From positions 1 through 15,991 of the forward strand of contig NW_021825290.1 of NCBI RefSeq assembly GCF_006345805.1: a stretch of 15,991 nt of DNA, in the 5' to 3' direction. The notes under the pieces are model-generated. The model did not search any database and was not told the DNA's origin. It saw only the letters and a list, made by a program, of their open reading frames with translations. This document shows positions 1 through 14,520 of the stretch, in pieces. A program made the translations under genes and the position numbers. This DNA comes from Octopus sinensis (taxonomy: Eukaryota). Positions within the stretch are counted from its first letter, which is position 1. The number at the start of each line of letters is the position of its first letter.

Positions 1-246
1 ATATATATATATATGCGTGTATGATTTTGGTGTGTCTGTGTTTGTCCCCCTAGCATTGCTTGACAACCGATGCTGGTGTGTTTATGTACCCGTAACTTAG
101 TGGTTCGGCAAAAAGAGACTGCTAGAAAAAGTACTGGGCTTACAAAAGAATAAGTCCTGGGGTCGAGTTGCTCGATTAAATGCGATGCTCCAGCATGGCC
201 ACAGTCAAATGACCGAAACAAGTAAAAGAGAGAAAATAGAGAAAGA
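1..246 (+). mobile_element. 3' half of SINE family A (5' head lies upstream of the window), preceded by its internal (TA)n/(TG)n tract
   Basis: 31-235 aligns closely with 4025-4236 (tgtgtctgtgtttgtccccc...gcttgacaaccgatgctggtgtgttta...ctccagcatggccacagt...aaaagag) and with the reverse complement of 3211-3410. It ends in an A/G-rich tail. Confidence 0.85.
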
Positions 247-296
247 GGGTATTGTGATTGAATTGTTCGACTAATCAGTCCCAGGTGTAACACCAC

Positions 297-2297
297 TTAA
301 GGTGGCTTTCCAATAACTGAATCAAAGAAGAAATAAACTACGTCGACTTTAATAGTAAAGATGACAGACATTGCTATAGCTGCGAATTTGATGATGCGAT
401 ACCTGTTGTTAGGTCGTAAGAAAGTGGAGCTGCCGCTGAGCATAAGATGTCCGCATGTATGACAACAGTCATGAATCCGATAAGTGTGGTTGTAAAATGG
501 ACATTCCTTACTCCAGCAGTGTTCTACTCGGTCTCCGTATTCACATTGGCTCATTTTGGATTTCAAGGCGTAGCAAGTCCAGCAACACTCTCTCCTGACC
601 ATAGGATCGTAGCAGAAATAGTCGTAACCGTCGGGTATATCTTTGCATGTCATGTTAAACGTACCGGGTATTACCCCATGCAATCTATCTCCGAGCCAAC
701 AATGTTTGAGAAGATGTGGAGCTCTTATGTTGTATAGACAATGTGTCATATGGCACCACATTTTCGTACCACACGATGTACCCTCGAGAGGATAAATCGC
801 CACGCATGTTGAGTTATGTAAGCAGAAAAGTCGTTTACAGAGCGTATTTCTATTAATGAAATTTTCTTTTTGGCATCCGTCTGCACTGGACGACAATCCA
901 AATTGGTCCTTACACTGCTCATTAGCAGAGAATTCCAGACCAGGTTTAAATGTGTCACTTAAATGAAATAGGGTTATACTGTCGTCCTTTGCTGTAACCT
1001 CTCCGGTGAAACAGAAAGGTATATGTCTATTTTTTCTTATTACAATCCTAAACTGCGCTACTGAACAACTAGAAAACTGAAAAATGCTGTTTTTTGCCGA
1101 CTCCAAATGGCCAAAATTGAATCCTCTCGACATGACATACTGCAGGCGAGTTTCGCATTTGTCTGCGGTTAAACCTATATTTTGAGCTATCATTTTAGAA
1201 GCTATTACAGCGGAGACTATAGAAAACCTTTCAAAAAGAACACTGGTGCCCGTTTTCGAACATATTCCTCGTGCCCAAGTTAAACCCGTTTCGTTATCAT
1301 TCGGAAAAACAATTTTTTTTTTTGTGACAAAGTGAACATGGTCGTAGTTCACCAAATTTGAACTCGTTTCGTTATTTAACCAATTCGTGAACAACGTCAG
1401 TGTCTGCTCGGCGCCCATGCCATCATCTGCCCACGGTGACGGTTTATGAATATTCCACATATAAATTCCCAGGCACGTTACTGAAACACTATATTCCATT
1501 GTGGAAAGTGTCTGAAATATGTGATCAATGATTTCTGAGGTATAATAATAATATTGCGTGAGGTAATAGATTAGGAAATCATTATCGTTTTGAAATCGAT
1601 GAGGCAGTTGACTAGAAAAGAATTCATATACACTACTGTCTATTACAATACCAATTTCTATAACATAGCGCACGCGTCTTCTCTTAGACCGATGTAATAA
1701 AGTCTTATCTAACGTAAATACGTTCTTGTTAAATTTTGGCAGATTGAAAAATGTGAAACTGCCTTCATTACTACTCAGTGAAAGATCATATACCTGGTGG
1801 AAATACCCATGTATTCGATGATTTCCTTCCAGTCTAGAATATATTTTATCAGATATAAAGTTCGGCAGAATGCCATACATAATATTTTTGTGAAAAATCC
1901 TACCACTCATCTTACACATACATGGGTCGTATTTACTGCCTCTTTCATCGCATTGCACCAGAAAAGAACTGCCAACTCCTTTGAAGACAGCTGTACGATT
2001 TCTCTTTGATCCAAATTGTTCAGTTCGAGATTCTTCTTCTCCGTTCTCGTCATTTACATAGAATACAGGTGTGCTTTTATCATCTTTGTTTAAAGTTAAT
2101 CGCAGTTCGATTGTTTCTCCGCGTAAGTGAAATATAAAATCGATCTTTTCTTGGCAATTGACCTCTCCGACTGAATGTGGTGCTTGGTATATTATTACTT
2201 TATCCGATATGAGTGTGCCTTCCATAGATTTTTTGGAACTAGGCGTCGATAAACAAAGAGCGGCATTTAGGATCCAAAGACCGAGAAATAACAACAT
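297..2297 (-). CDS. ADAM/ADAMTS-like (M12B reprolysin fold) secreted or surface protein, predicted catalytically inactive; single uninterrupted ORF of 666 aa
   Basis: ATG at 2295-2297, TAA at 297-299. Hydrophobic signal peptide aa1-17; furin site RSKR aa203-206 (1680-1691); reprolysin hallmarks YVIEIGIVID, YDHVHFVT, GLTWARGIC, Met-turn VMS and FSSCS; ADAMTS-type PGLEFSANEQC..FG and EGTSCG..MWC; two CxxGD...CCxTC repeats; six N-glycosylation sequons (N100, N309, N335, N495, N548, N603). No TSP1 WxxWxxW repeat. Confidence 0.9.
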   Translation of the reverse strand: MLLFLGLWILNAALCLSTPSSKKSMEGTLISDKVIIYQAPHSVGEVNCQEKIDFIFHLRGETIELRLTLNKDDKSTPVFYVNDENGEEESRTEQFGSKRNRTAVFKGVGSSFLVQCDERGSKYDPCMCKMSGRIFHKNIMYGILPNFISDKIYSRLEGNHRIHGYFHQVYDLSLSSNEGSFTFFNLPKFNKNVFTLDKTLLHRSKRRRVRYVIEIGIVIDSSVYEFFSSQLPHRFQNDNDFLIYYLTQYYYYTSEIIDHIFQTLSTMEYSVSVTCLGIYMWNIHKPSPWADDGMGAEQTLTLFTNWLNNETSSNLVNYDHVHFVTKKKIVFPNDNETGLTWARGICSKTGTSVLFERFSIVSAVIASKMIAQNIGLTADKCETRLQYVMSRGFNFGHLESAKNSIFQFSSCSVAQFRIVIRKNRHIPFCFTGEVTAKDDSITLFHLSDTFKPGLEFSANEQCKDQFGLSSSADGCQKENFINRNTLCKRLFCLHNSTCVAIYPLEGTSCGTKMWCHMTHCLYNIRAPHLLKHCWLGDRLHGVIPGTFNMTCKDIPDGYDYFCYDPMVRRECCWTCYALKSKMSQCEYGDRVEHCWSKECPFYNHTYRIHDCCHTCGHLMLSGSSTFLRPNNRYRIIKFAAIAMSVIFTIKVDVVYFFFDSVIGKPP

Positions 2298-2429
2298 ATT
2301 CTGTTATTTATTACAATCTGCGGACATTTTGTTTCTTAGTTCCAATTGCTTTGCTCGTTGTATGTGTATGTGTGTAGACAGGTATTATTAGCAATTTATG
2401 TTTGTGTGTCTGTGTGTCCCTATAAATGT

Positions 2430-2493
2430 ATACATACACAAATACTCACGCACAAAATACATATACATATACATATATATATATATGCATATG

Positions 2494-2562
<69 letters not shown>

Positions 2563-2597
2563 ATAATATATATATATGCATAATGTATATATATATA

Positions 2598-2631
<34 letters not shown>

Positions 2632-2835
2632 TTGCATATAAATATGTATGTATATTTATATAAGAATAAATATATACATGTATCTGTCTGTTATATATAT
2701 ATATATCGATATGAGTATATATGTATACACATATATAAGAGTGTATATATATATGTGTGTGTGTGTGTGCATGTGTGTGTGTATACACATATACACGTAC
2801 ACATCTACATGTGTGGATATATATGTATGTATGTA
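2430..2835. repeat. Compound (TA)n/(CA)n/(TG)n/(TATG)n microsatellite
   Basis: Directly visible dinucleotide and tetranucleotide tracts. Confidence 0.95.
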
Positions 2836-2908
2836 CGCATTCAATAGAGAACAATAAACAAACAAATCATATTATGATAATGGGACATGACGTAGATGCT
2901 ATTACCTG

Positions 2909-3206: not shown

Positions 3207-3421
3207 CTTCTTTCCTCTTTTACTCTTTTACTTGTTTCAGTCATTTGACTGCGGCCATGCTGGAGCACCGCCTTTTTAATCGAGCAACTCGGCTTATTCT
3301 TTTGTAAGCCCAGTACTTATTCTATCGGTCTCTTTTGCCGAAACGCTAAGTAACTGGGACACAAACACACCAGCATCGGTTGTCAAGCAATGCTAGGGGG
3401 ACACACAAACACACACACGCT

Positions 3422-3794: not shown

Positions 3795-4236
3795 GGCGCA
3801 GGAGTGGCTGTGTAGTAAGTAGCTTGCTTACCAACAACATGGTTCCGGGTTCAATCCCACTGCGTAGCACCTTGGGCAAGTGTCTTCTACTATAGCCTCG
3901 GGCCGACCAAAGCCTTGTGAGTGGATTTGGTAGACAGAAACTGAAAGAAGCCCGTCGTATAATATATATATATACATATATACATATATATGTATGTATG
4001 TATGTATTTGTGTGTGTATACTTTTGTGTGTCTGTATTTGTCCCCCCCAACATCGCTTGACAACCGATGCTGGTGTGTTTACGTCCCCGTAACTTAGCGG
4101 TTCGGCAAAAGAAACCGATAGAATAAGTACTAGGCTTACAAAGTATAAGTCTAGAGGACGATTTTGCTCGACTAAAGGCGGTGCTCCAGCATGGCCACAG
4201 TAAAATGACTGAAAACATGGAAGAGTAAAAGAGAAA
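3795..4236 (+). mobile_element. Full-length tRNA-derived SINE, family A, with internal microsatellite
   Basis: ggcgcaggagtggctgtgtagtaag head, B box ggttcaatccc (3848-3858), same body as 3207-3642, internal (TA)/(TATG)/(TG) tract ~3958-4030, 3' module shared with 31-235, tail gagtaaaagagaaa. Confidence 0.9.
3805..3858 (+). promoter_or_regulatory. RNA polymerase III type-2 internal promoter (A box and B box) of the SINE head
   Basis: tggctgtgtagt (3805-3816) and ggttcaatccc (3848-3858) at tRNA-like spacing. Activity is not demonstrated. Confidence 0.6.
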
Positions 4237-4344
4237 GTGGTTCCGATTGTGCAGTCCCGAAATTGTCATTGGCACCGTGCGGACAAAAGCACGGAACGCA
4301 GACATCCAGAGGGTTCGCATCCATAGAGGTCGCCCCTACATCCG

Positions 4345-4704
4345 TCTCTTTCTGTCTCATTATCTCTCATGCGCACGCTCCCTCTCTTCCCCTTCTCTCC
4401 CTCTCTCCATCTCTTTGTTTATCTTCCTTTTTCCCAGTAGATGAGTGTGAGTGGGTGTGTGTATGTGTGTTTCATATTATATATTAACATAAGTGCTTCT
4501 TATATGTGTGAATATGAGAGTGTGTGTATGTATGTATGCATGTATGTATGTATGTATGTATGTATGTGAGTGTGTATACATATGTGTGAGCGTGCTCGCG
4601 CGTATATATATATATGCATAGTTCTATGTACAGAGAGTATGTATTTTCATTTCTCTCATGTACATGCAAACACACACACACTTTATGTAGACTATAAGAA
4701 CATA

Positions 4705-4752
<48 letters not shown>

Positions 4753-4844
4753 GTATATGTAATGTATGGTTATGATTATATATGTATATATTATATATTG
4801 TATATATTATATTATATATATATTATGTATTATATATGATATAT

Positions 4845-4878
<34 letters not shown>

Positions 4879-5071
4879 TAACATGTATACATGTGTGTAT
4901 GTATATATGTATATGTATATGCATATATATATGCATATATATATATGCATTGTTTATAAATTTAATTATACATCAGCACCTTTTATATTTTATGTACGTA
5001 TAATAGTCACATAAACATATATGTATACACACAGACAGACACATACTCATACACACACATACTTACACAAG

Positions 5072-5134
<63 letters not shown>

Positions 5135-5195
5135 AGATTGGGTATATAAGTATTTTTATGTACCAGCGTACGTGTGTGTGTGTGCGTGTGCATTG
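4345..5195. repeat. CT-rich low complexity followed by a long compound (TG)n/(TATG)n/(TA)n/(CA)n microsatellite
   Basis: Directly visible. Confidence 0.95.
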
Positions 5196-5502
5196 CTACG
5201 CCTATACGTGTCTTCTGGGCAAGAAAAATTTTCAACCATATTCGCTATAGAAATTTAATTATACTCCTGTGCTGCAATTTCCCACGGGTGTGTATTAATA
5301 ATTGCAAAATTCTAGATAAAAATACACATCAATTACAAAATGCGCTGCATCAAAGCCTTGAAATGAATGCAATTTATAAAATACCATCGGAAGACTAAAG
5401 TCTAGTCTTACGGCAGGGGCTGGCCGGGGGTTCGGTCTGGGTTTCTCAACGTATGGCTTGTAAGTCAATGGTCTCGTTAAGTTTCCCGTTTTATTTTTCT
5501 TT

Positions 5503-5539
<37 letters not shown>

Positions 5540-5577
5540 CCACCATCATCATCACCATCATCACCATCATCATCATC

Positions 5578-5608
<31 letters not shown>

Positions 5609-5685
5609 CCACCACCATCATCATCATCATCATCATCATAATCATCATCATCATTATTTTTTTGTTGTTATTTCTATTATTATTA

Positions 5686-5719
<34 letters not shown>

Positions 5720-5933
5720 CATCATCATCATTATTATTATTATTATTATTATTGTTGTTGTTGTTGTTACTATTATTATTATCATTATTATTATTATTAT
5801 TATTATTATCATCATCATCATTATTATTATTATTATTATATTATTATTATTATTATCATTATTATTATTATTATTATTATCATCATTATTATTATCATTA
5901 TTATTATTATTATTATTATCATCATTATTATTA

Positions 5934-5997
<64 letters not shown>
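5503..5997 (+). repeat. Compound trinucleotide array (ATC/ACC)n then (ATT)n with (GTT)n and (ATC)n blocks
   Basis: About 495 bp of trinucleotide units. It produces the poly-M/S/L/Y/I ORFs in the track. Confidence 0.95.
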
Positions 5998-6282
5998 GTC
6001 ACGGTATGTTTTTACTATTTTTTTTTTCTCTCTATATTTCAATAATTAAATATCGTTAAAAGTACTACTCAGACTTATTTCGATGTAGATAATAGTTTTG
6101 TTTGGTTTTTGTTTGTTTCTTTTCTTACTTTTAGTGGGGCGTTTTGGTTGGGTTTTACTGTTTTTTTAACTTTCCACTGTCCTTTTCTTTTTGCTTTTAT
6201 ATTTTTCATTTTGTTCTTTAATCAATGAGTTTTGTTATTTTTATACGGTGCCCCAATTGGTTCTTGTATATTTGATAAAACG

Positions 6283-7377: not shown

Positions 7378-7386
7378 GTGTATATA

Positions 7387-7433
<47 letters not shown>

Positions 7434-7464
7434 CATAGACACACATACACACACTTGTATATAT

Positions 7465-7508
<44 letters not shown>

Positions 7509-7529
7509 GACACACATACACACACTTGT

Positions 7530-7572
<43 letters not shown>

Positions 7573-7588
7573 TAATACATATATATAT
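7378..7588. repeat. (TA)n tract containing two identical 26-bp cores 71 bp apart
   Basis: tacatagacacacatacacacacttg at 7432-7457 and 7503-7528. Confidence 0.9.
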
Positions 7589-7592
7589 AATT

Positions 7593-7990: not shown

Positions 7991-8219
7991 CTACTATAAA
8001 GATTTATGGATGATTTAGCGAAATGTTAATGCGTATACTACGGCAACTAAAGAAAAACACAGCAAATATTCAATCCCATTCTAGCCAACAGCAATGAATG
8101 CATTAACGGAAGAAACTGCAGCAGTCTCTGTAGCGAAGAAAACTTCTACATATTAACTAAAACAACAGACATTCCACAAAGAAAACCTGTAAACTGTATT
8201 GTCTGTCTATCCATCTCAA

Positions 8220-8232
8220 TGTCTCTCTCCTC

Positions 8233-8297
<65 letters not shown>

Positions 8298-8349
8298 ATA
8301 TATATATATATGTATTTATGTATGTATATATATGTGTATGTATGAATGC

Positions 8350-8383
<34 letters not shown>

Positions 8384-8395
8384 ATTCATATCTCC
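8220..8395. repeat. (CT)n followed by (TA)n/(TATG)n microsatellite
   Basis: Directly visible. Confidence 0.95.
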
Positions 8396-8592
8396 ATATC
8401 AGTATAGGCGTCCGTATAGATGCATGCGTGTATGTGGGTATTTTACTTAGCTTCGACATATTTAAGGTGAAAGAGAGATGATGATCGATTGCTTTAGAAC
8501 CATTTCAGGTATAAGGTTCTCTGGCTGGACGCCAGGGTGTTATGTACTATTGAAGAGCTGGAAAATTAATGAAATACAGAAATACAGTGAAC

Positions 8593-8761
<169 letters not shown>

Positions 8762-9439
8762 ACAGTGACAGACAGAGAGACAGATATTTATACATATATG
8801 TATATATACACTGAGAAAGATAGAGATAGATTGAGAGTTGAGGTGAGTAAATGAGAAACAGAAGAATTGAAAATGAGAAATTGATCGAACCACATAACAA
8901 AGGAACCAGAGAAATGGCAGCTCTTATCTGCCATAAGATACTTCGATCTATCATCATGTTAATTTCTCAAAATGGGCTCAGAATTCTATCGTTGGCAACA
9001 GAACGGAGCAGAAATATTCCTGAAGCTTCATGTTTCGTCTGTTATTTAATATTTTGCCAGGACACGTATCCAAAATATTGGGTTATTCATTTCTCAAGAT
9101 AAGTCAACTAACCTCCAAACTTTTTGCCAGCACATCAAATTATACTAGCAAGTATATTTTCTCGTTTATTTTTGGCTTCATACTATTTGTGAACATTAGC
9201 GTCGTTAGATAGAGGCTTGTTATTTTTAATATTTTTCTTTCAAAGACGCCCATCAGTGCTTCACTGCTTTTATTTCAATGGAGAACAGTGATAAGAGAAT
9301 ATTTAGCTAACTCAAACAGGATAAATACCACGGTGTGCCAAGGTTTTAATTCACCATACTAGTTTATTTCATTTTATCAACACCTACAGACACATAGACA
9401 TATCTATATTGATGTTTCCGCCGTACTTGTAATATTCAT

Positions 9440-9627: not shown

Positions 9628-9858
9628 GGCGGCAAGTTGGCAGAAACGTTGACATGTTAGGCGAAATGCTTAGCGATATTTCATCTACCGTTACGTTCTG
9701 AGTTCAAATTCCGCCGAGGTCGACTTTGCCTTTCATCCTTTCGGGGTCGATAAATAAAGTACCAGTTACGTACTGGGGTCGATATAATCAACTTAATCTC
9801 CTTGTCTGTCCTTGTTTGTCTCTCTGTGTTTAGCTTCTTGTGGGTAGTAAAGAAATAG
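9628..9858 (+). mobile_element. tRNA-derived SINE, family D (first and only complete unit of the tandem array)
   Basis: Head ggcggcaagttggcagaaacgttg (A-box-like), B box gagttcaaattcc, body gaggtcgactttgcctttcatcctttcggggtcgataaa...gtaccagt, tail gtgggtagtaaagaaata. Confidence 0.85.
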
Positions 9859-10265
9859 GTATTTTATCTACCGTTACGTTCTGAGTTCAAATTCCACCGA
9901 GGTTGACTTTGCCATTCATCCTTTCGGGATCGATAAATTAAGTACCAGTTACGCACTGGGGTCGATGTAATCGCCTTAATACCTATGTCTGTTCTTGTTT
10001 GTCCCCTCTATGTTTAGCTCCTTGTGGGCGATAAAGAAATACGTATTTCATCAACCGTTACGTTCTGAGTTCAAATTCCGCCGAGGTCGACTTTGCCTTT
10101 CATCCTTTCAGGGTCAATAAATTAAGTACCAGTTACGCACTGGGGTCAATGTAATCAACTTAATCCGTTTGTCTGTCCTTGTCTGTCCCCTCTATGTTTA
10201 GCCTATTGTGGGCAATAAAGAAATACGTATTTCATCTACCGTTACGTTCTAAGTTCAAATTCCGC
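9676..10265 (+). repeat. SINE-derived tandem array: 3 full units plus 1 partial unit, period 183-184 bp
   Basis: The marker gttacgttct recurs at 9690, 9873, 10057 and 10241. Units start at 9676, 9859, 10043 and 10227, and the last is cut off by a (CA)n tract. Confidence 0.95.
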
Positions 10266-10689: not shown

Positions 10690-10780
10690 ATCTCTCCATC
10701 TCCCTCTCTCTCTCTCTCTCTCTCTCTAAATATATTATATATTATTATATATATATATACATATATATATATTATATATA

Positions 10781-10811
<31 letters not shown>

Positions 10812-10834
10812 GATAGATAGATTGATAGATAGAT

Positions 10835-10893
<59 letters not shown>

Positions 10894-11121
10894 GATAGAT
10901 AGATATACATAGATATTTATACATATATATATTTATATGTATAGATATACATGTATGTATATGTATATATTTGTATGTATGTATTATATATATACATACA
11001 TATATGTATGTATATATGTATATATATGTCTGTATGTATTTATATTATATATGCATACATATACGCATGCATATTTGCGAATGTATGAGTGTGTGTCAAA
11101 TATATGAGTATATACGTATAT

Positions 11122-11189
<68 letters not shown>

Positions 11190-11200
11190 ATACATATATA

Positions 11201-11245
<45 letters not shown>

Positions 11246-11412
11246 TATATATTATATATATATATATATAATATACATACATACATACACCCATACATAC
11301 ACACATACATACACACATACGTAACGCAAACCTACATACGTACCTATGTGCATATACATATATAGAGTGGCATACATATATATATATACACACACACGCA
11401 CACATACACACA

Positions 11413-11459
<47 letters not shown>

Positions 11460-11470
11460 CACACATAGAC
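10690..11470. repeat. Long compound microsatellite: (CT)n, (TA)n, (GATA)n at 10794-10905, (TATG)n, (TA)n, (CATA)n, (CA)n
   Basis: Directly visible. Confidence 0.95.
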
Positions 11471-12741: not shown

Positions 12742-12790
<49 letters not shown>

Positions 12791-12805
12791 ATATATATAA
12801 TATAC
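12700..12805. repeat. (TA)n/(TATG)n microsatellite
   Basis: Directly visible. Confidence 0.9.
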
Positions 12806-13271
12806 TATCGTGACGGATGAGATTTGGCAGTTATTTCAGTATGATGGTCGAACACATATACACAGGAACTGCCATAGTTTGTTGAATACGGTCTCACATT
12901 TAAAATAACTAAATTATACAGAAGACCCTAATTCTAAAAGTTTTAGAATTTCCATGGAAACCAACGAGACTTAGGCCTTTTAGCAATAGGATCTCAAATT
13001 GCAGTAACAAATCAAATTTACTCTGAATATTAGCCTCTAAGTGAAATTCAATTCCACACATATTTCCTTTCAGAAATATATGTCAATTAAGATTCAGCAC
13101 GCCAGAACGTGCATGGATTGTTGAACAGAAATGTTTAATTTGATATCTAATTAAGCTAACATATTTAATTTAATATATAATTCCAATTTCATGACAATGG
13201 AAGATGTTATTCAGTGGGTGTCCCCCTAACTTGGTAAACAATTGATATATTGTTTAGTAAGCGGGTGGAAG

Positions 13272-14214: not shown

Positions 14215-14436
14215 AATGACATATATACATATATAAACGCATGAATGCATACATAAATACGTACGTACGTACATACATACATACATGCATACATACATAC
14301 ATACATACATACATACATACATACATACATACAATACATGCATCATACAGCATACATACATACATACATACATACTACATACATACATACTGCATGCATA
14401 CATACATCATACATACATACTTACATACTACATACA

Positions 14437-14468
<32 letters not shown>

Positions 14469-14520
14469 CATACATATATGCATACATACATTTATACATA
14501 AATGTGTATAAGTACGTTCA
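14215..14520 (+). repeat. (CATA)n tetranucleotide array, imperfect
   Basis: Directly visible. Confidence 0.95.

What the first reader, a model, noticed from the sequence alone, without database searches (positions are those of the whole stretch)
1161..1196. Zinc-binding site completely erased in an otherwise intact reprolysin fold (pseudo-protease)
Seen: at the position of HExxHxxGxxHD the protein reads K368-M-I-A-Q-N-I-G-L-T-A-D379. All three His ligands and the catalytic Glu are lost (H>K AAA, E>M ATG, H>Q CAA, H>A GCA), while the structural G375, D379, the following Cys, Met-turn M389, FSSCS and the furin site are kept. Three of the four changes need two or more substitutions, implying long-standing loss. 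A-to-I editing cannot restore His or Glu at these positions. Established: metzincin catalysis needs these residues, and non-catalytic ADAMs (ADAM11/22/23) act as adhesion or ligand receptors. Inference: a cephalopod protease-dead ADAMTS-like receptor, decoy or scaffold. This is the best protein-level candidate for something undescribed here.
Basis: partly seen in the sequence, partly recalled or inferred. Interest (0 to 1): 0.72.

Follow-up and report, generated by a model that had tools for sequence, protein, structure and literature searches.

The report
Octopus protease gene that lost its active site
This octopus gene encodes a secreted protein that keeps the shape of an ADAMTS-type metalloprotease but has lost every zinc-binding and catalytic residue; selection still keeps the gene intact, so it is a pseudo-protease that probably works by binding, one of a small unstudied octopus family.

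Summary
Window 1161-1196 (minus strand) encodes K368-MIAQNIGLTA-D379 inside a single-exon 666-aa ORF (297-2297). Sequence, profile and predicted-structure alignments all place it on the HExxHxxGxxHD helix of ADAMTS-type M12B proteases. One correction: the third His and the Asp look deleted (a 4-residue gap), not substituted, and D379 is not conserved.

The dead site is not an artefact. A syntenic O. bimaculoides orthologue (LOC106878282), a third octopod orthologue and four paralogue lineages all lack it. They form one clade (bootstrap 76%) whose sister is an active, also intronless gene named 'metalloprotease mig-17' by NCBI.

The ORF is under selection (overall dN/dS 0.5; 0 of 5000 neutral simulations keep it open). 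The constraint sits on the prodomain, the disintegrin-like domain and two C-terminal 6-Cys modules (0.19-0.48). The dead catalytic-like domain evolves near neutrally (0.87, against 0.03 in the active sister).

All dead members also have a GPI-signal-like hydrophobic tail that the active sister lacks. The same mollusc family lost the site at least five times.

Verdict: a real, maintained, non-catalytic MIG-17-like pseudo-protease. It is a new variant of a known kind. Its role as binder, scaffold or decoy is inferred, and expression is unverified.

The parts
297..2297 (-). Single-exon CDS of the 666-aa pseudo-protease, including the stop codon at 297-299.
   Evidence: ORF list and translation. 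It is collinear with the single-exon O. bimaculoides LOC106878282. There are no net indels across 2001 nt, against 14 gap events per kb in the flanks.
2235..2297 (-). Signal peptide, about aa 1-21 (MLLFLGLWILNAALCLSTPSS).
   Evidence: Hydrophobic N-terminus read directly from the sequence. AF2 models helix 2-16. An upstream in-frame ATG is closed by TAA in this window.
1680..2234 (-). Prodomain, about aa 22-206. It is beta-rich and under purifying selection.
   Evidence: AF2 models strands 31-171. dN/dS is 0.25-0.47, p<=0.0014.
1668..1691 (-). Proprotein-convertase (furin-type) site R203-S-K-R206 followed by R-R-V-R210.
   Evidence: Regex search. R203, K205 and R206 are invariant in all eight octopod proteins.
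978..1679 (-). Catalytic-like (M12B/adamalysin-fold) domain, about aa 207-440, with no zinc site.
   Evidence: phmmer to ADAMTS13. AF2 pLDDT is about 90 and Foldseek matches ADAMTS1/4/5 with target TM-score 0.70-0.75. Pfam Reprolysin models fall below their cut-offs. dN/dS is 0.86-0.89. All five Cys are conserved with the active sister.
1161..1196 (-). Erased zinc-binding motif K368-M-I-A-Q-N-I-G-L-T-A-D379, in place of HExxHxxGxxHD. A 4-residue deletion removes the third His/Asp segment.
1131..1133 (-). Met-turn methionine M389, retained.
   Evidence: Invariant in the alignments.
735..944 (-). ADAMTS-type disintegrin-like domain, aa 452-521.
   Evidence: Pfam PF17771 ADAMTS_CR_2, E 4.8e-13, 49.8 bits against a cut-off of 27.3. 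It aligns to the ADAMTS13 D domain. dN/dS is 0.19-0.33.
573..701 (-). First C-terminal 6-Cys module, aa 533-575 (C..C..C..CCxxC).
   Evidence: All six Cys are invariant. AF2 models it as helical with pLDDT about 86-94. No Pfam family matches it, PLAC included. dN/dS for both modules together is 0.31-0.48.
453..545 (-). Second C-terminal 6-Cys module, aa 585-615 (CEYGDR..C..C..CCHTC).
   Evidence: Same as for the first module. The module is repeated many times in bivalve and gastropod relatives such as P0008.
300..452 (-). C-terminal tail, aa 616-666: a small-residue cluster (SGSS), a spacer, then a hydrophobic end. This is the layout of a GPI-attachment signal.
   Evidence: The tail is present in all 7 dead-clade proteins and absent from both active sisters, which end 9 aa after the last Cys. 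AF2 models a low-confidence helix 634-661.

Best explanation
The gene encodes a selectively maintained but catalytically dead descendant of a MIG-17-like (ADAMTS-type) secreted metalloprotease.

Shown:
- The layout is signal peptide, prodomain, furin site, adamalysin-fold domain, ADAMTS-type disintegrin-like domain and two 6-Cys modules.
- The fold and all disulfide cysteines are kept. The three zinc ligands and the catalytic Glu are gone, and the third-ligand loop is shortened by four residues.
- The gene belongs to an intronless octopod clade in which one branch stayed active and one branch lost the site and then duplicated.
- Purifying selection acts on the prodomain, the disintegrin-like domain and the Cys modules, but hardly on the dead domain.

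Inferred:
- The protein enters the secretory pathway and is cut by a furin-type convertase.
- It is tethered to the cell surface by a GPI anchor.
- It acts by binding rather than cleaving, as a matrix or cell-surface adaptor or as a competitor of the active paralogue for shared partners.
- The binding is done mainly by the disintegrin-like and Cys modules, and perhaps the prodomain.
- The dead catalytic-like domain is a disulfide-locked passenger or spacer. It may even be shed, as happens in some non-catalytic ADAMs.
For: Dead motif and register.

Fold intact: AF2 mean pLDDT 79, catalytic-like domain about 90. Foldseek's best hits are ADAMTS1/4/5/13 at E 1e-12 to 6e-15.

Orthologues and paralogues with dead sites: KMIAQNIGLT / KVIAINIGLT / QLIAYNIGIEFD / YILAVSFGIKED / QLIGRSIGIPFD.

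Tree: the dead clade is monophyletic in 152/200 bootstraps. Dead clade plus the active Argonauta protein is monophyletic in 200/200.

Active O. bimaculoides sister: HELGHSLGVLHDG, single exon, on a different chromosome.

Selection:
- Whole gene dN/dS 0.50-0.56, p<1e-5.
- Prodomain 0.25-0.47, disintegrin-like 0.19-0.33, Cys modules 0.31-0.48.
- Catalytic-like domain 0.86-0.89, p about 0.5-0.6.
- Active pair: catalytic domain 0.03.
- A second dead pair: catalytic-like 0.41, disintegrin-like 0.05, Cys modules 0.16.

ORF maintenance: 0 of 5000 neutral simulations stay open, and there are no net indels.

The furin site is invariant. All 31 Cys columns from C275 onward are shared with the active sister. 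The GPI-signal-like tail occurs only in dead members.

Precedent: non-catalytic ADAMs work by binding, and some discard the dead domain (review PMC11266112). MIG-17 depends on its prodomain and disintegrin domain (PMC4856095).
Against: - There is no evidence of transcription or of a protein product. The public contigs carrying relatives end in microsatellites and look genomic, and no poly(A) signal lies in the 296 nt available downstream.
- A dN/dS of 0.5 is high for a structural or adhesion protein.
- The GPI anchor is judged only from the layout of the tail. No predictor was run.
- No partner is known.
- dN/dS rests on three sequences and the Nei-Gojobori method.
- The third orthologue's orthology is assumed, and its species is unknown.
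- One paralogue copy (P0004 locus) carries a frameshift. It may be a long-read assembly error or real decay.
Confidence: 0.68

Rival explanations
1. The dead catalytic-like domain is itself the working part: a fast-evolving ligand-recognition surface under diversifying selection, as the ADAM22 metalloprotease-like domain binds LGI1. On this reading the protein is a cell-surface receptor.
For: - The catalytic-like domain averages dN/dS 0.87 while keeping every cysteine, the Met-turn and a confidently predicted fold. That pattern could be a conserved core mixed with sites above 1.
- The C-terminal half reaches 1.1-1.3 in two of three comparisons.
- ADAM22 is a precedent.
- The GPI-like tail suits a receptor.
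Against: - No region is significantly above 1 (all p>0.28).
- The paralogue pair shows 0.41, which is plain relaxed constraint.
- Three sequences cannot separate relaxation from positive selection.
Confidence: 0.15
2. The locus is a functionless relic, a retrogene-derived copy drifting towards pseudogene status.
For: - The gene is intronless (against the multi-exon relatives).
- The coding sequence is as diverged from the O. bimaculoides copy (substitution p 0.14) as its immediate flanks (0.17-0.20), and more than the distal collinear non-coding blocks (0.05-0.12).
- There are no expression data.
- One paralogue has a frameshift.
Against: - A 2-kb ORF is open in three species at dS 0.27-0.43, while 0 of 5000 neutral simulations keep it open.
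- There are no net indels, against 14 gap events per kb in the flanks.
- dN/dS is significantly below 1 in three domains.
- All cysteines and the furin site are invariant across paralogues only 25-33% identical to the window protein.
Confidence: 0.08
3. The protein is still an enzyme, using other residues or another metal-binding arrangement.
For: Only that the cleft-forming fold, the Met-turn and G375 persist.
Against: - No His, Glu or Asp on the active-site helix is conserved.
- The nearby D379, E382 and H397 vary among orthologues.
- The third-ligand loop is shortened by four residues.
- The domain evolves near neutrally, whereas the active sister's catalytic domain is at 0.03.
Confidence: 0.03
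4. Assembly or sequencing artefact: the true gene has HExxH.
For: None found.
Against: The same erased motif is found in an independent reference genome at the syntenic locus, in a third species, and in four paralogue lineages from independent data sets.
Confidence: 0.01

Closest known systems
C. elegans MIG-17 and the octopus genes that NCBI names 'metalloprotease mig-17' (O. bimaculoides P0158; Argonauta hians GAB1611091.1)
   Same: - Layout: signal peptide, prodomain, M12B domain, ADAMTS-type disintegrin-like domain, then a small C-terminal Cys-rich module, with no thrombospondin repeat.
- The octopus 'mig-17' genes are the immediate sister of the dead clade (200/200 bootstrap) and are also intronless.
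   Different: - Those proteins keep HELGHSLGxLHD and a catalytic domain under very strong constraint (dN/dS 0.03). They also end 9 residues after the last Cys.
- The window protein has no zinc site, a relaxed catalytic-like domain and an added hydrophobic tail.
- Orthology to nematode MIG-17 itself was not tested.
- The C-terminal modules do not match Pfam PLAC.
Non-catalytic ADAMs (ADAM11/22/23, ADAM2/18/32, unc-71)
   Same: - M12B pseudo-proteases with the Met-turn kept and the motif degraded in a similar way. ADAM18 QLLGLNVGLTYD and ADAM22 QSLAHNIGIISD compare with octopod QLIAYNIGIEFD and KMIAQNIGLT.
- They are surface-attached and act by binding.
- Some shed the dead domain.
   Different: - They belong to a different branch of M12B. 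The window protein has the ADAMTS-type disintegrin-like domain (PF17771).
- It has no Pfam match to the ADAM disintegrin, ADAM cysteine-rich or EGF domains.
- It has no transmembrane and cytoplasmic tail, only a short GPI-signal-like end.
- The loss of the site is independent.
Canonical ADAMTS proteases (ADAMTS1/4/5/13)
   Same: They are the best structural and sequence matches for the catalytic-like plus disintegrin-like pair. They share the furin-processed prodomain.
   Different: The window protein has no TSP1 repeat, no cysteine-rich or spacer region and no zinc site.
ADAMTS-like (ADAMTSL) proteins and papilin
   Same: Non-catalytic relatives of the ADAMTS superfamily that act in the matrix by binding (established knowledge).
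   Different: ADAMTSLs lack the prodomain and catalytic domain altogether and are built of TSP1 and spacer modules. Here the dead catalytic domain is retained and there are no TSP1 repeats.
Other dead-site members of the same mollusc family (Dreissena XP_052272708.1, Saccostrea XP_061177722.1, Mizuhopecten OWF49167.1, Physella XP_059146118.1, Liolophura XP_064599216.1 and others)
   Same: Same family by profile search. They have degraded motifs such as TQQIARSLGSRDD, AQELGRSLGSRLD and RELGRGLGANYD, and all are uncharacterised.
   Different: They are independent losses on the tree, with at least 5 events. They are longer proteins. The relatives examined there, two active ones (Mytilus, Haliotis), are multi-exon genes.

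Membership tests
M12B adamalysin/reprolysin-fold metzincin domain | Adamalysin fold of the catalytic domain | tested here: met
   AF2 pLDDT is about 90 over residues 209-430. Foldseek matches ADAMTS1 2v4b at E 5.9e-15 with target TM 0.75, and ADAM/SVMP catalytic domains at TM 0.75-0.84. phmmer to ADAMTS13 gives E 1.5e-7.
M12B adamalysin/reprolysin-fold metzincin domain | HExxHxxGxxH zinc-binding consensus with the catalytic Glu | tested here: not met
   The site reads K-M-x-x-Q-x-x-G, the third-ligand segment is deleted or Ala, and there is no HExxH elsewhere.
M12B adamalysin/reprolysin-fold metzincin domain | Met-turn methionine downstream of the motif | tested here: met
   M389 is invariant in dead and active relatives.
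M12B adamalysin/reprolysin-fold metzincin domain | Passes a Pfam Reprolysin model at its gathering score | tested here: not met
   The best hit is Reprolysin_2 at 14.6 bits against a cut-off of 27. The O. bimaculoides orthologue sits exactly on the PF01421 cut-off (20.8), and the active sisters pass.
ADAMTS family (canonical) | ADAMTS-type disintegrin-like domain after the catalytic domain | tested here: met
   PF17771 ADAMTS_CR_2, 49.8 bits against a cut-off of 27.3, residues 452-521.
ADAMTS family (canonical) | At least one thrombospondin type-1 repeat, then the cysteine-rich and spacer regions | tested here: not met
   No TSP_1 or ADAMTS spacer hit appears even at E<=1. The C-terminus is two short 6-Cys modules instead.
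ADAMTS family (canonical) | Prodomain ending in a furin-type site | tested here: met
   RSKR206/RRVR210. R203, K205 and R206 are invariant.
MIG-17-like (ADAMTS-type protease without TSP1) | Architecture SS-Pro-MP-DI-PLAC without TSP1 (PMC4856095) | tested here: inconclusive
   The order SS-Pro-MP(like)-DI is met. The C-terminal modules have a PLAC-like cysteine spacing as I recall it from memory, but they give no Pfam PLAC hit even at E<=10. The sister gene carries the name 'mig-17' from NCBI, which is a name and not a test.
MIG-17-like (ADAMTS-type protease without TSP1) | Catalytic activity needed for function | tested here: not met
   The zinc ligands and the Glu are absent.
MIG-17-like (ADAMTS-type protease without TSP1) | Orthology to C. 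elegans MIG-17 | not tested
   No nematode sequence was obtained.
Non-catalytic ADAMs (ADAM11/22/23 type) | ADAM disintegrin, ADAM cysteine-rich and EGF domains, a transmembrane helix and a cytoplasmic tail | tested here: not met
   There are no Pfam hits to those domains. The protein ends in a 51-residue tail with no cytoplasmic part.
Non-catalytic ADAMs (ADAM11/22/23 type) | Degraded zinc motif with the fold retained | tested here: met
   compared with Table 2 of PMC11266112.
GPI-anchored surface proteins | C-terminal signal: small omega-site residues, a polar spacer and a terminal hydrophobic stretch | tested here: inconclusive
   The layout is present in all 7 dead-clade tails (SGSS, then about 13 residues, then FAAIAMSVIFTI...; maximum Kyte-Doolittle hydropathy over 13 residues is 1.5-2.4) and absent in the active sisters. 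No dedicated predictor or experiment was available. In the window protein the hydrophobic run is interrupted by K/D.

The most novel reading that the evidence does not exclude
After retroposition, an octopod-specific gene family was converted from a secreted basement-membrane protease into GPI-anchored surface proteins. Their disulfide-locked, zinc-less protease shell became a rapidly diversifying recognition surface. Alternatively, they act as dominant-negative regulators that compete with the active MIG-17-like paralogue for matrix docking sites. Either way this would be the first described pseudo-protease lineage on the ADAMTS side of M12B. The loss of the catalytic site and the gain of the anchor fall on the same branch.
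Probability: 0.15. Interest if true: 0.7.

Novelty: new variant of a known kind. Interest (0 to 1): 0.45.

Why it matters
Pseudo-proteases are a recognised class. The M12 examples listed in the 2024 review I read (PMC11266112) are all ADAMs. The ADAMTS side is known for losing the catalytic domain altogether (ADAMTSL), not for keeping a dead one.

This locus offers a clean natural experiment:
- An active gene and a dead sister clade sit side by side in the same genomes.
- The selective signature is reversed. The catalytic domain goes from the most constrained part (dN/dS 0.03) to the least (0.87).
- The dead branch alone has a probable membrane anchor.
- The same family lost the site at least five times in molluscs.

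That makes it a workable system for asking what a protease fold is kept for once catalysis is gone. It also corrects annotation: the O. bimaculoides orthologue is labelled only 'uncharacterized' or 'Peptidase M12B domain-containing'. The practical importance is modest unless expression and a partner are found.

Tried and rejected
- **Logan contigs as evidence of transcription.** The contigs carrying relatives have similar lengths across runs, which first suggested transcripts. Their ends are microsatellites and none has a poly(A) tail, so they are genomic. Rejected as expression evidence.
- **Literature search for the run accession SRR11869384, to name the third species.** Nothing found. Searches for octopus or mollusc ADAMTS pseudo-proteases found no paper on this family.
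- **Calling the C-terminal modules PLAC, or the prodomain a known domain.** Pfam gives nothing usable even at E<=10, so the PLAC label was dropped.
- **Flanking non-coding divergence as a neutral yardstick.** Alignable distal blocks are less diverged (p 0.05-0.12) than the CDS (0.14), but the immediate flanks are at 0.17-0.20 and 4-fold sites at 0.175. The yardstick is ambiguous, so I relied on dN/dS and ORF simulations instead.
- **Positive selection in the catalytic-like domain.** Local dN/dS reaches 1.1-1.6, but no comparison is significant. Not claimed.
- **RNA genes in the window.** Rfam and tRNA scans found none.
- **Tandem paralogues next to the gene.** tblastn finds none in this window or in the 22-kb O. 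bimaculoides locus. Two other dead paralogues, however, lie 18 kb apart on one ENA contig.
Full report
**1. The observation**

The window carries one long ORF, 297..2297 on the minus strand. It is 666 codons with no intron. Residues 368-379 are K-M-I-A-Q-N-I-G-L-T-A-D, encoded by AAA ATG ATA GCT CAA AAT ATA GGT TTA ACC GCA GAC at window 1161-1196, exactly as reported. No HExxH exists elsewhere in the protein.

His to Lys, Glu to Met and His to Ala each need at least two changes. A-to-I recoding of these codons cannot produce His or Glu where they are needed (read directly from the sequence).

**2. Is this really the zinc-motif position?**

Four independent lines say yes.

- phmmer against the PDB aligns residues 306-522 with ADAMTS13 (6qig, E 1.5e-7). 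K368, M369, Q372, A378 and D379 fall on H224, E225 (Q in that crystal mutant), H228, H234 and D235.
- A profile of the three orthologues, searched against 1.84 billion representative proteins, found 446 relatives. Among the 152 proteins then compared (the 150 listed representatives plus the two orthologues), 118 carry HExxHxxGxxH in the column block where this protein reads K-M-..-Q.
- Direct alignments with the closest active proteins show the same register.
- An AlphaFold2 model built on 86 family sequences has mean pLDDT 79 and pTM 0.72. The catalytic-like domain is at about 90, and helix 361-374 carries the motif. Foldseek's best PDB matches are the catalytic plus disintegrin-like structures of ADAMTS1, ADAMTS4, ADAMTS5 and ADAMTS13 (E 6e-15 to 2e-12, target TM-score 0.70-0.75 for the catalytic plus disintegrin-like structures, lower for the longer ADAMTS13 chain).

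One detail of the finding needs correcting. Between G375 and C381 this lineage is four residues shorter than its paralogues and the active sister: GLT----ADKC against GILHDGKNNTC. The family alignment places the gap on H-D-G-K. The third His and the metzincin Asp are therefore most simply deleted, not replaced by A378 and D379. D379 is N and V in the two orthologues.

The other 'kept' residues are invariant. These are G375, C381, the Met-turn M389, F408-S409-x-C411 and the furin site R203-x-K205-R206.

**3. What the protein is**

Pfam recognises only the ADAMTS-type disintegrin-like domain (PF17771, residues 452-521, E 4.8e-13). The Reprolysin models fall below threshold, and there is no thrombospondin repeat, spacer, ADAM disintegrin or EGF domain.

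The full layout is:

- signal peptide;
- a beta-rich prodomain;
- the furin site RSKR/RRVR;
- an adamalysin-fold domain with no zinc site;
- a disintegrin-like domain;
- two helical 6-Cys modules ending CCxxC, which no Pfam family matches, PLAC included;
- a 51-residue tail.

Without TSP1 repeats it is not a canonical ADAMTS. The layout is that of MIG-17, described as signal sequence, prodomain, metalloprotease, disintegrin, PLAC (PMC4856095).

**4. Relatives**

*Orthologues.*

- O. bimaculoides LOC106878282 is 74% identical and also a single exon. It lies in a locus collinear with this window over the whole 16 kb. Its motif is KMIAQNIGLTEN.
- A third orthologue, from an octopod whole-genome run, is 63% identical and reads KVIAINIGLTEV.

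*Dead paralogues.* The exhaustive search adds four more distant lineages, 25-33% identical to the window protein, and all are dead:

| Protein | Motif |
|---|---|
| P0004 | QLIAYNIGIEFDG |
| P0005 | QLIAYNIGVNFDG |
| P0006 | YILAVSFGIKEDG |
| P0009 | QLIGRSIGIPFDK |

Two of them lie 18 kb apart, on the same strand, on one contig. One occurs in the same sequencing run as the third orthologue, so paralogues coexist in one genome.

*The active sister.* The nearest active protein is Argonauta hians GAB1611091.1 (HELGHSLGILHDG). Its O. bimaculoides orthologue, which NCBI names 'metalloprotease mig-17', is 73% identical to it. That gene is active by sequence and lies on a different chromosome from the dead gene.

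*Tree.* On a neighbour-joining tree the seven dead octopod proteins form one clade (152/200 bootstraps). That clade plus the active Argonauta protein is recovered in 200/200. The simplest history is one loss followed by duplication, before Argonauta and Octopus diverged.

*Gene structure.* Every octopod gene of this clade that I examined is a single uninterrupted ORF. A Mytilus relative spans 46 kb and a Haliotis relative 41 kb. An ancestral retroposition is therefore likely, though this is inference.

*The wider family.* The family is molluscan, plus a bryozoan hit, and many members carry mucin-like stalks and transmembrane helices. Loss of the zinc motif recurs within it. Nineteen of the 127 representatives on the tree are dead, and these need at least five independent events. 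They occur in bivalves, a gastropod and, off the tree, a chiton.

**5. Is the gene alive?**

Nei-Gojobori dN/dS over the whole gene is 0.50-0.56 in all three pairs (Fisher p<1e-5). At the observed divergence, none of 5000 neutral simulations kept the ORF open. The CDS has no net indel in 2001 nt, while the flanks carry 14 gap events per kb. The gene is therefore maintained.

The constraint is unevenly spread:

| Region | This gene (3 pairs) | Active sister, Argonauta vs O. bimaculoides | Second dead pair, P0004/P0005 |
|---|---|---|---|
| Prodomain | 0.25-0.47 | 0.23 (dN 0.37, least conserved) | not measured |
| Catalytic(-like) domain | 0.86-0.89 (p 0.5-0.6, same as 1) | 0.03 (dN 0.066, most conserved) | 0.41 |
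| Disintegrin-like | 0.19-0.33 | dN 0.122 (dS saturated) | 0.05 |
| Cys modules | 0.31-0.48 | dN 0.126 (dS saturated) | 0.16 |

The order of conservation is thus reversed between the dead gene and its active sister. Yet all five cysteines of the dead domain, and all 26 of the downstream modules, are shared with the active sister, and the fold is predicted with confidence. The domain survives as a scaffold, while the selective weight has moved to the modules around it.

**6. A second change on the same branch**

All seven dead proteins end in a 27-51-residue tail. It consists of a cluster of small residues (SGSS, GASSS, STSS, KASSA, KSSSA, SGS, FSSS), a spacer and a hydrophobic terminus. This is the layout of a GPI-attachment signal. 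Both active sisters stop nine residues after the last cysteine. This is a reading of the sequence, not a prediction by a dedicated tool.

**7. Most likely mechanism**

*Shown:* the site cannot hold the catalytic zinc or the general base; the protein keeps its secretory signal, convertase site and disulfide framework; selection acts on the non-catalytic parts.

*Inferred:* the protein is secreted, cut after R206 (or R210) and tethered to the cell surface. It acts by binding matrix or surface partners through the disintegrin-like and Cys modules, and possibly the prodomain. MIG-17 needs its prodomain for tissue targeting and its disintegrin domain for processing.

It may compete with the active paralogue for the same docking sites. 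The dead domain would be a spacer or a disposable part. Some non-catalytic ADAMs discard theirs, while ADAM22 uses the surface of its dead domain to bind LGI1 (PMC11266112). The ADAM22 model is the main rival. It is compatible with the high dN/dS but is not demonstrated.

**8. Weak points**

- No evidence of transcription was obtainable. The public contigs are genomic, and the window ends 296 nt after the stop codon without a poly(A) signal.
- Selection estimates rest on three sequences and a counting method.
- The species of several relatives are unknown.
- The monophyly of the dead clade has moderate support only.
- One paralogue copy has a frameshift that may be a long-read error.

**9. Novelty**

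I found no paper on this family. The O. bimaculoides orthologue is annotated as uncharacterised. The M12 pseudo-peptidases tabulated in the 2024 review are all ADAMs.

The concept of a dead metzincin that works by binding is well known. What is new is the branch it occurs on (MIG-17-like/ADAMTS-type), the intronless octopod expansion, the reversed selection pattern, and the anchor-like tail found only in the dead branch. I rate it a new variant of a known kind, of moderate interest.

Noticed in passing
window 31-250; also 3209-3415 (-) and 4027-4240 (+): A SINE-like interspersed repeat of about 220 bp begins 47 nt downstream of the gene's stop codon. Two more copies in the window are 83-85% identical to it. 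None of the three positions falls inside the blocks that align with the O. bimaculoides locus, so they look like lineage-specific insertions.
   Followed up: partly
window 9677-10265: A tandem array of 3.2 copies of a 184-bp unit (88% matches). It is absent from the orthologous O. bimaculoides locus and from the two other octopod loci checked.
   Followed up: partly
window 251-2629 against distal blocks (e.g. 8041-9370, 12770-13271): The CDS (substitution p 0.14; 4-fold sites 0.175) and its immediate flanks (0.17-0.20) are more diverged from O. bimaculoides than the collinear non-coding blocks further away (0.05-0.12). Either the distal blocks are constrained elements, or the gene region mutates or evolves faster. 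This is unexplained.
   Followed up: partly
window 2400-2860, 4700-6050, 7380-7590, 8590-8760, 10730-11470, 14220-14500: About a fifth of the window is microsatellite: (AT)n, (ATC)n, (ATT)n, (GATA)n, (ACAT)n, (TG)n. All the other ORFs of 100 aa or more in the window are translations of these repeats or of the SINE-like element, not genes.
   Followed up: yes
L003 9466-10000 (ENA ERZ21867824 ctg111803l): The paralogue P0004 is split. Its N-terminal 109 residues are in one frame and the rest in another, with the shift near L003 9740-9820. This is either a long-read indel error or a real disabling frameshift in that copy.
   Followed up: partly
window 2298-2330 (upstream of the ATG at 2297): An in-frame upstream ATG is closed by TAA in this window. 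The third orthologue starts at the equivalent upstream ATG and lacks the Met at the main start, and the O. bimaculoides model carries a 13-residue N-terminal extension. The start codon has therefore shifted between species, although a hydrophobic signal region is kept.
   Followed up: partly
relatives P0012-P0017 (not in the window): Many active members of the mollusc family combine the ADAMTS-type catalytic and disintegrin-like pair with repeated 6-Cys modules, a Ser/Thr-rich mucin-like stalk, a transmembrane helix and a long cytoplasmic tail. I did not find this membrane-anchored ADAMTS-type architecture described in the papers searched.
   Followed up: no
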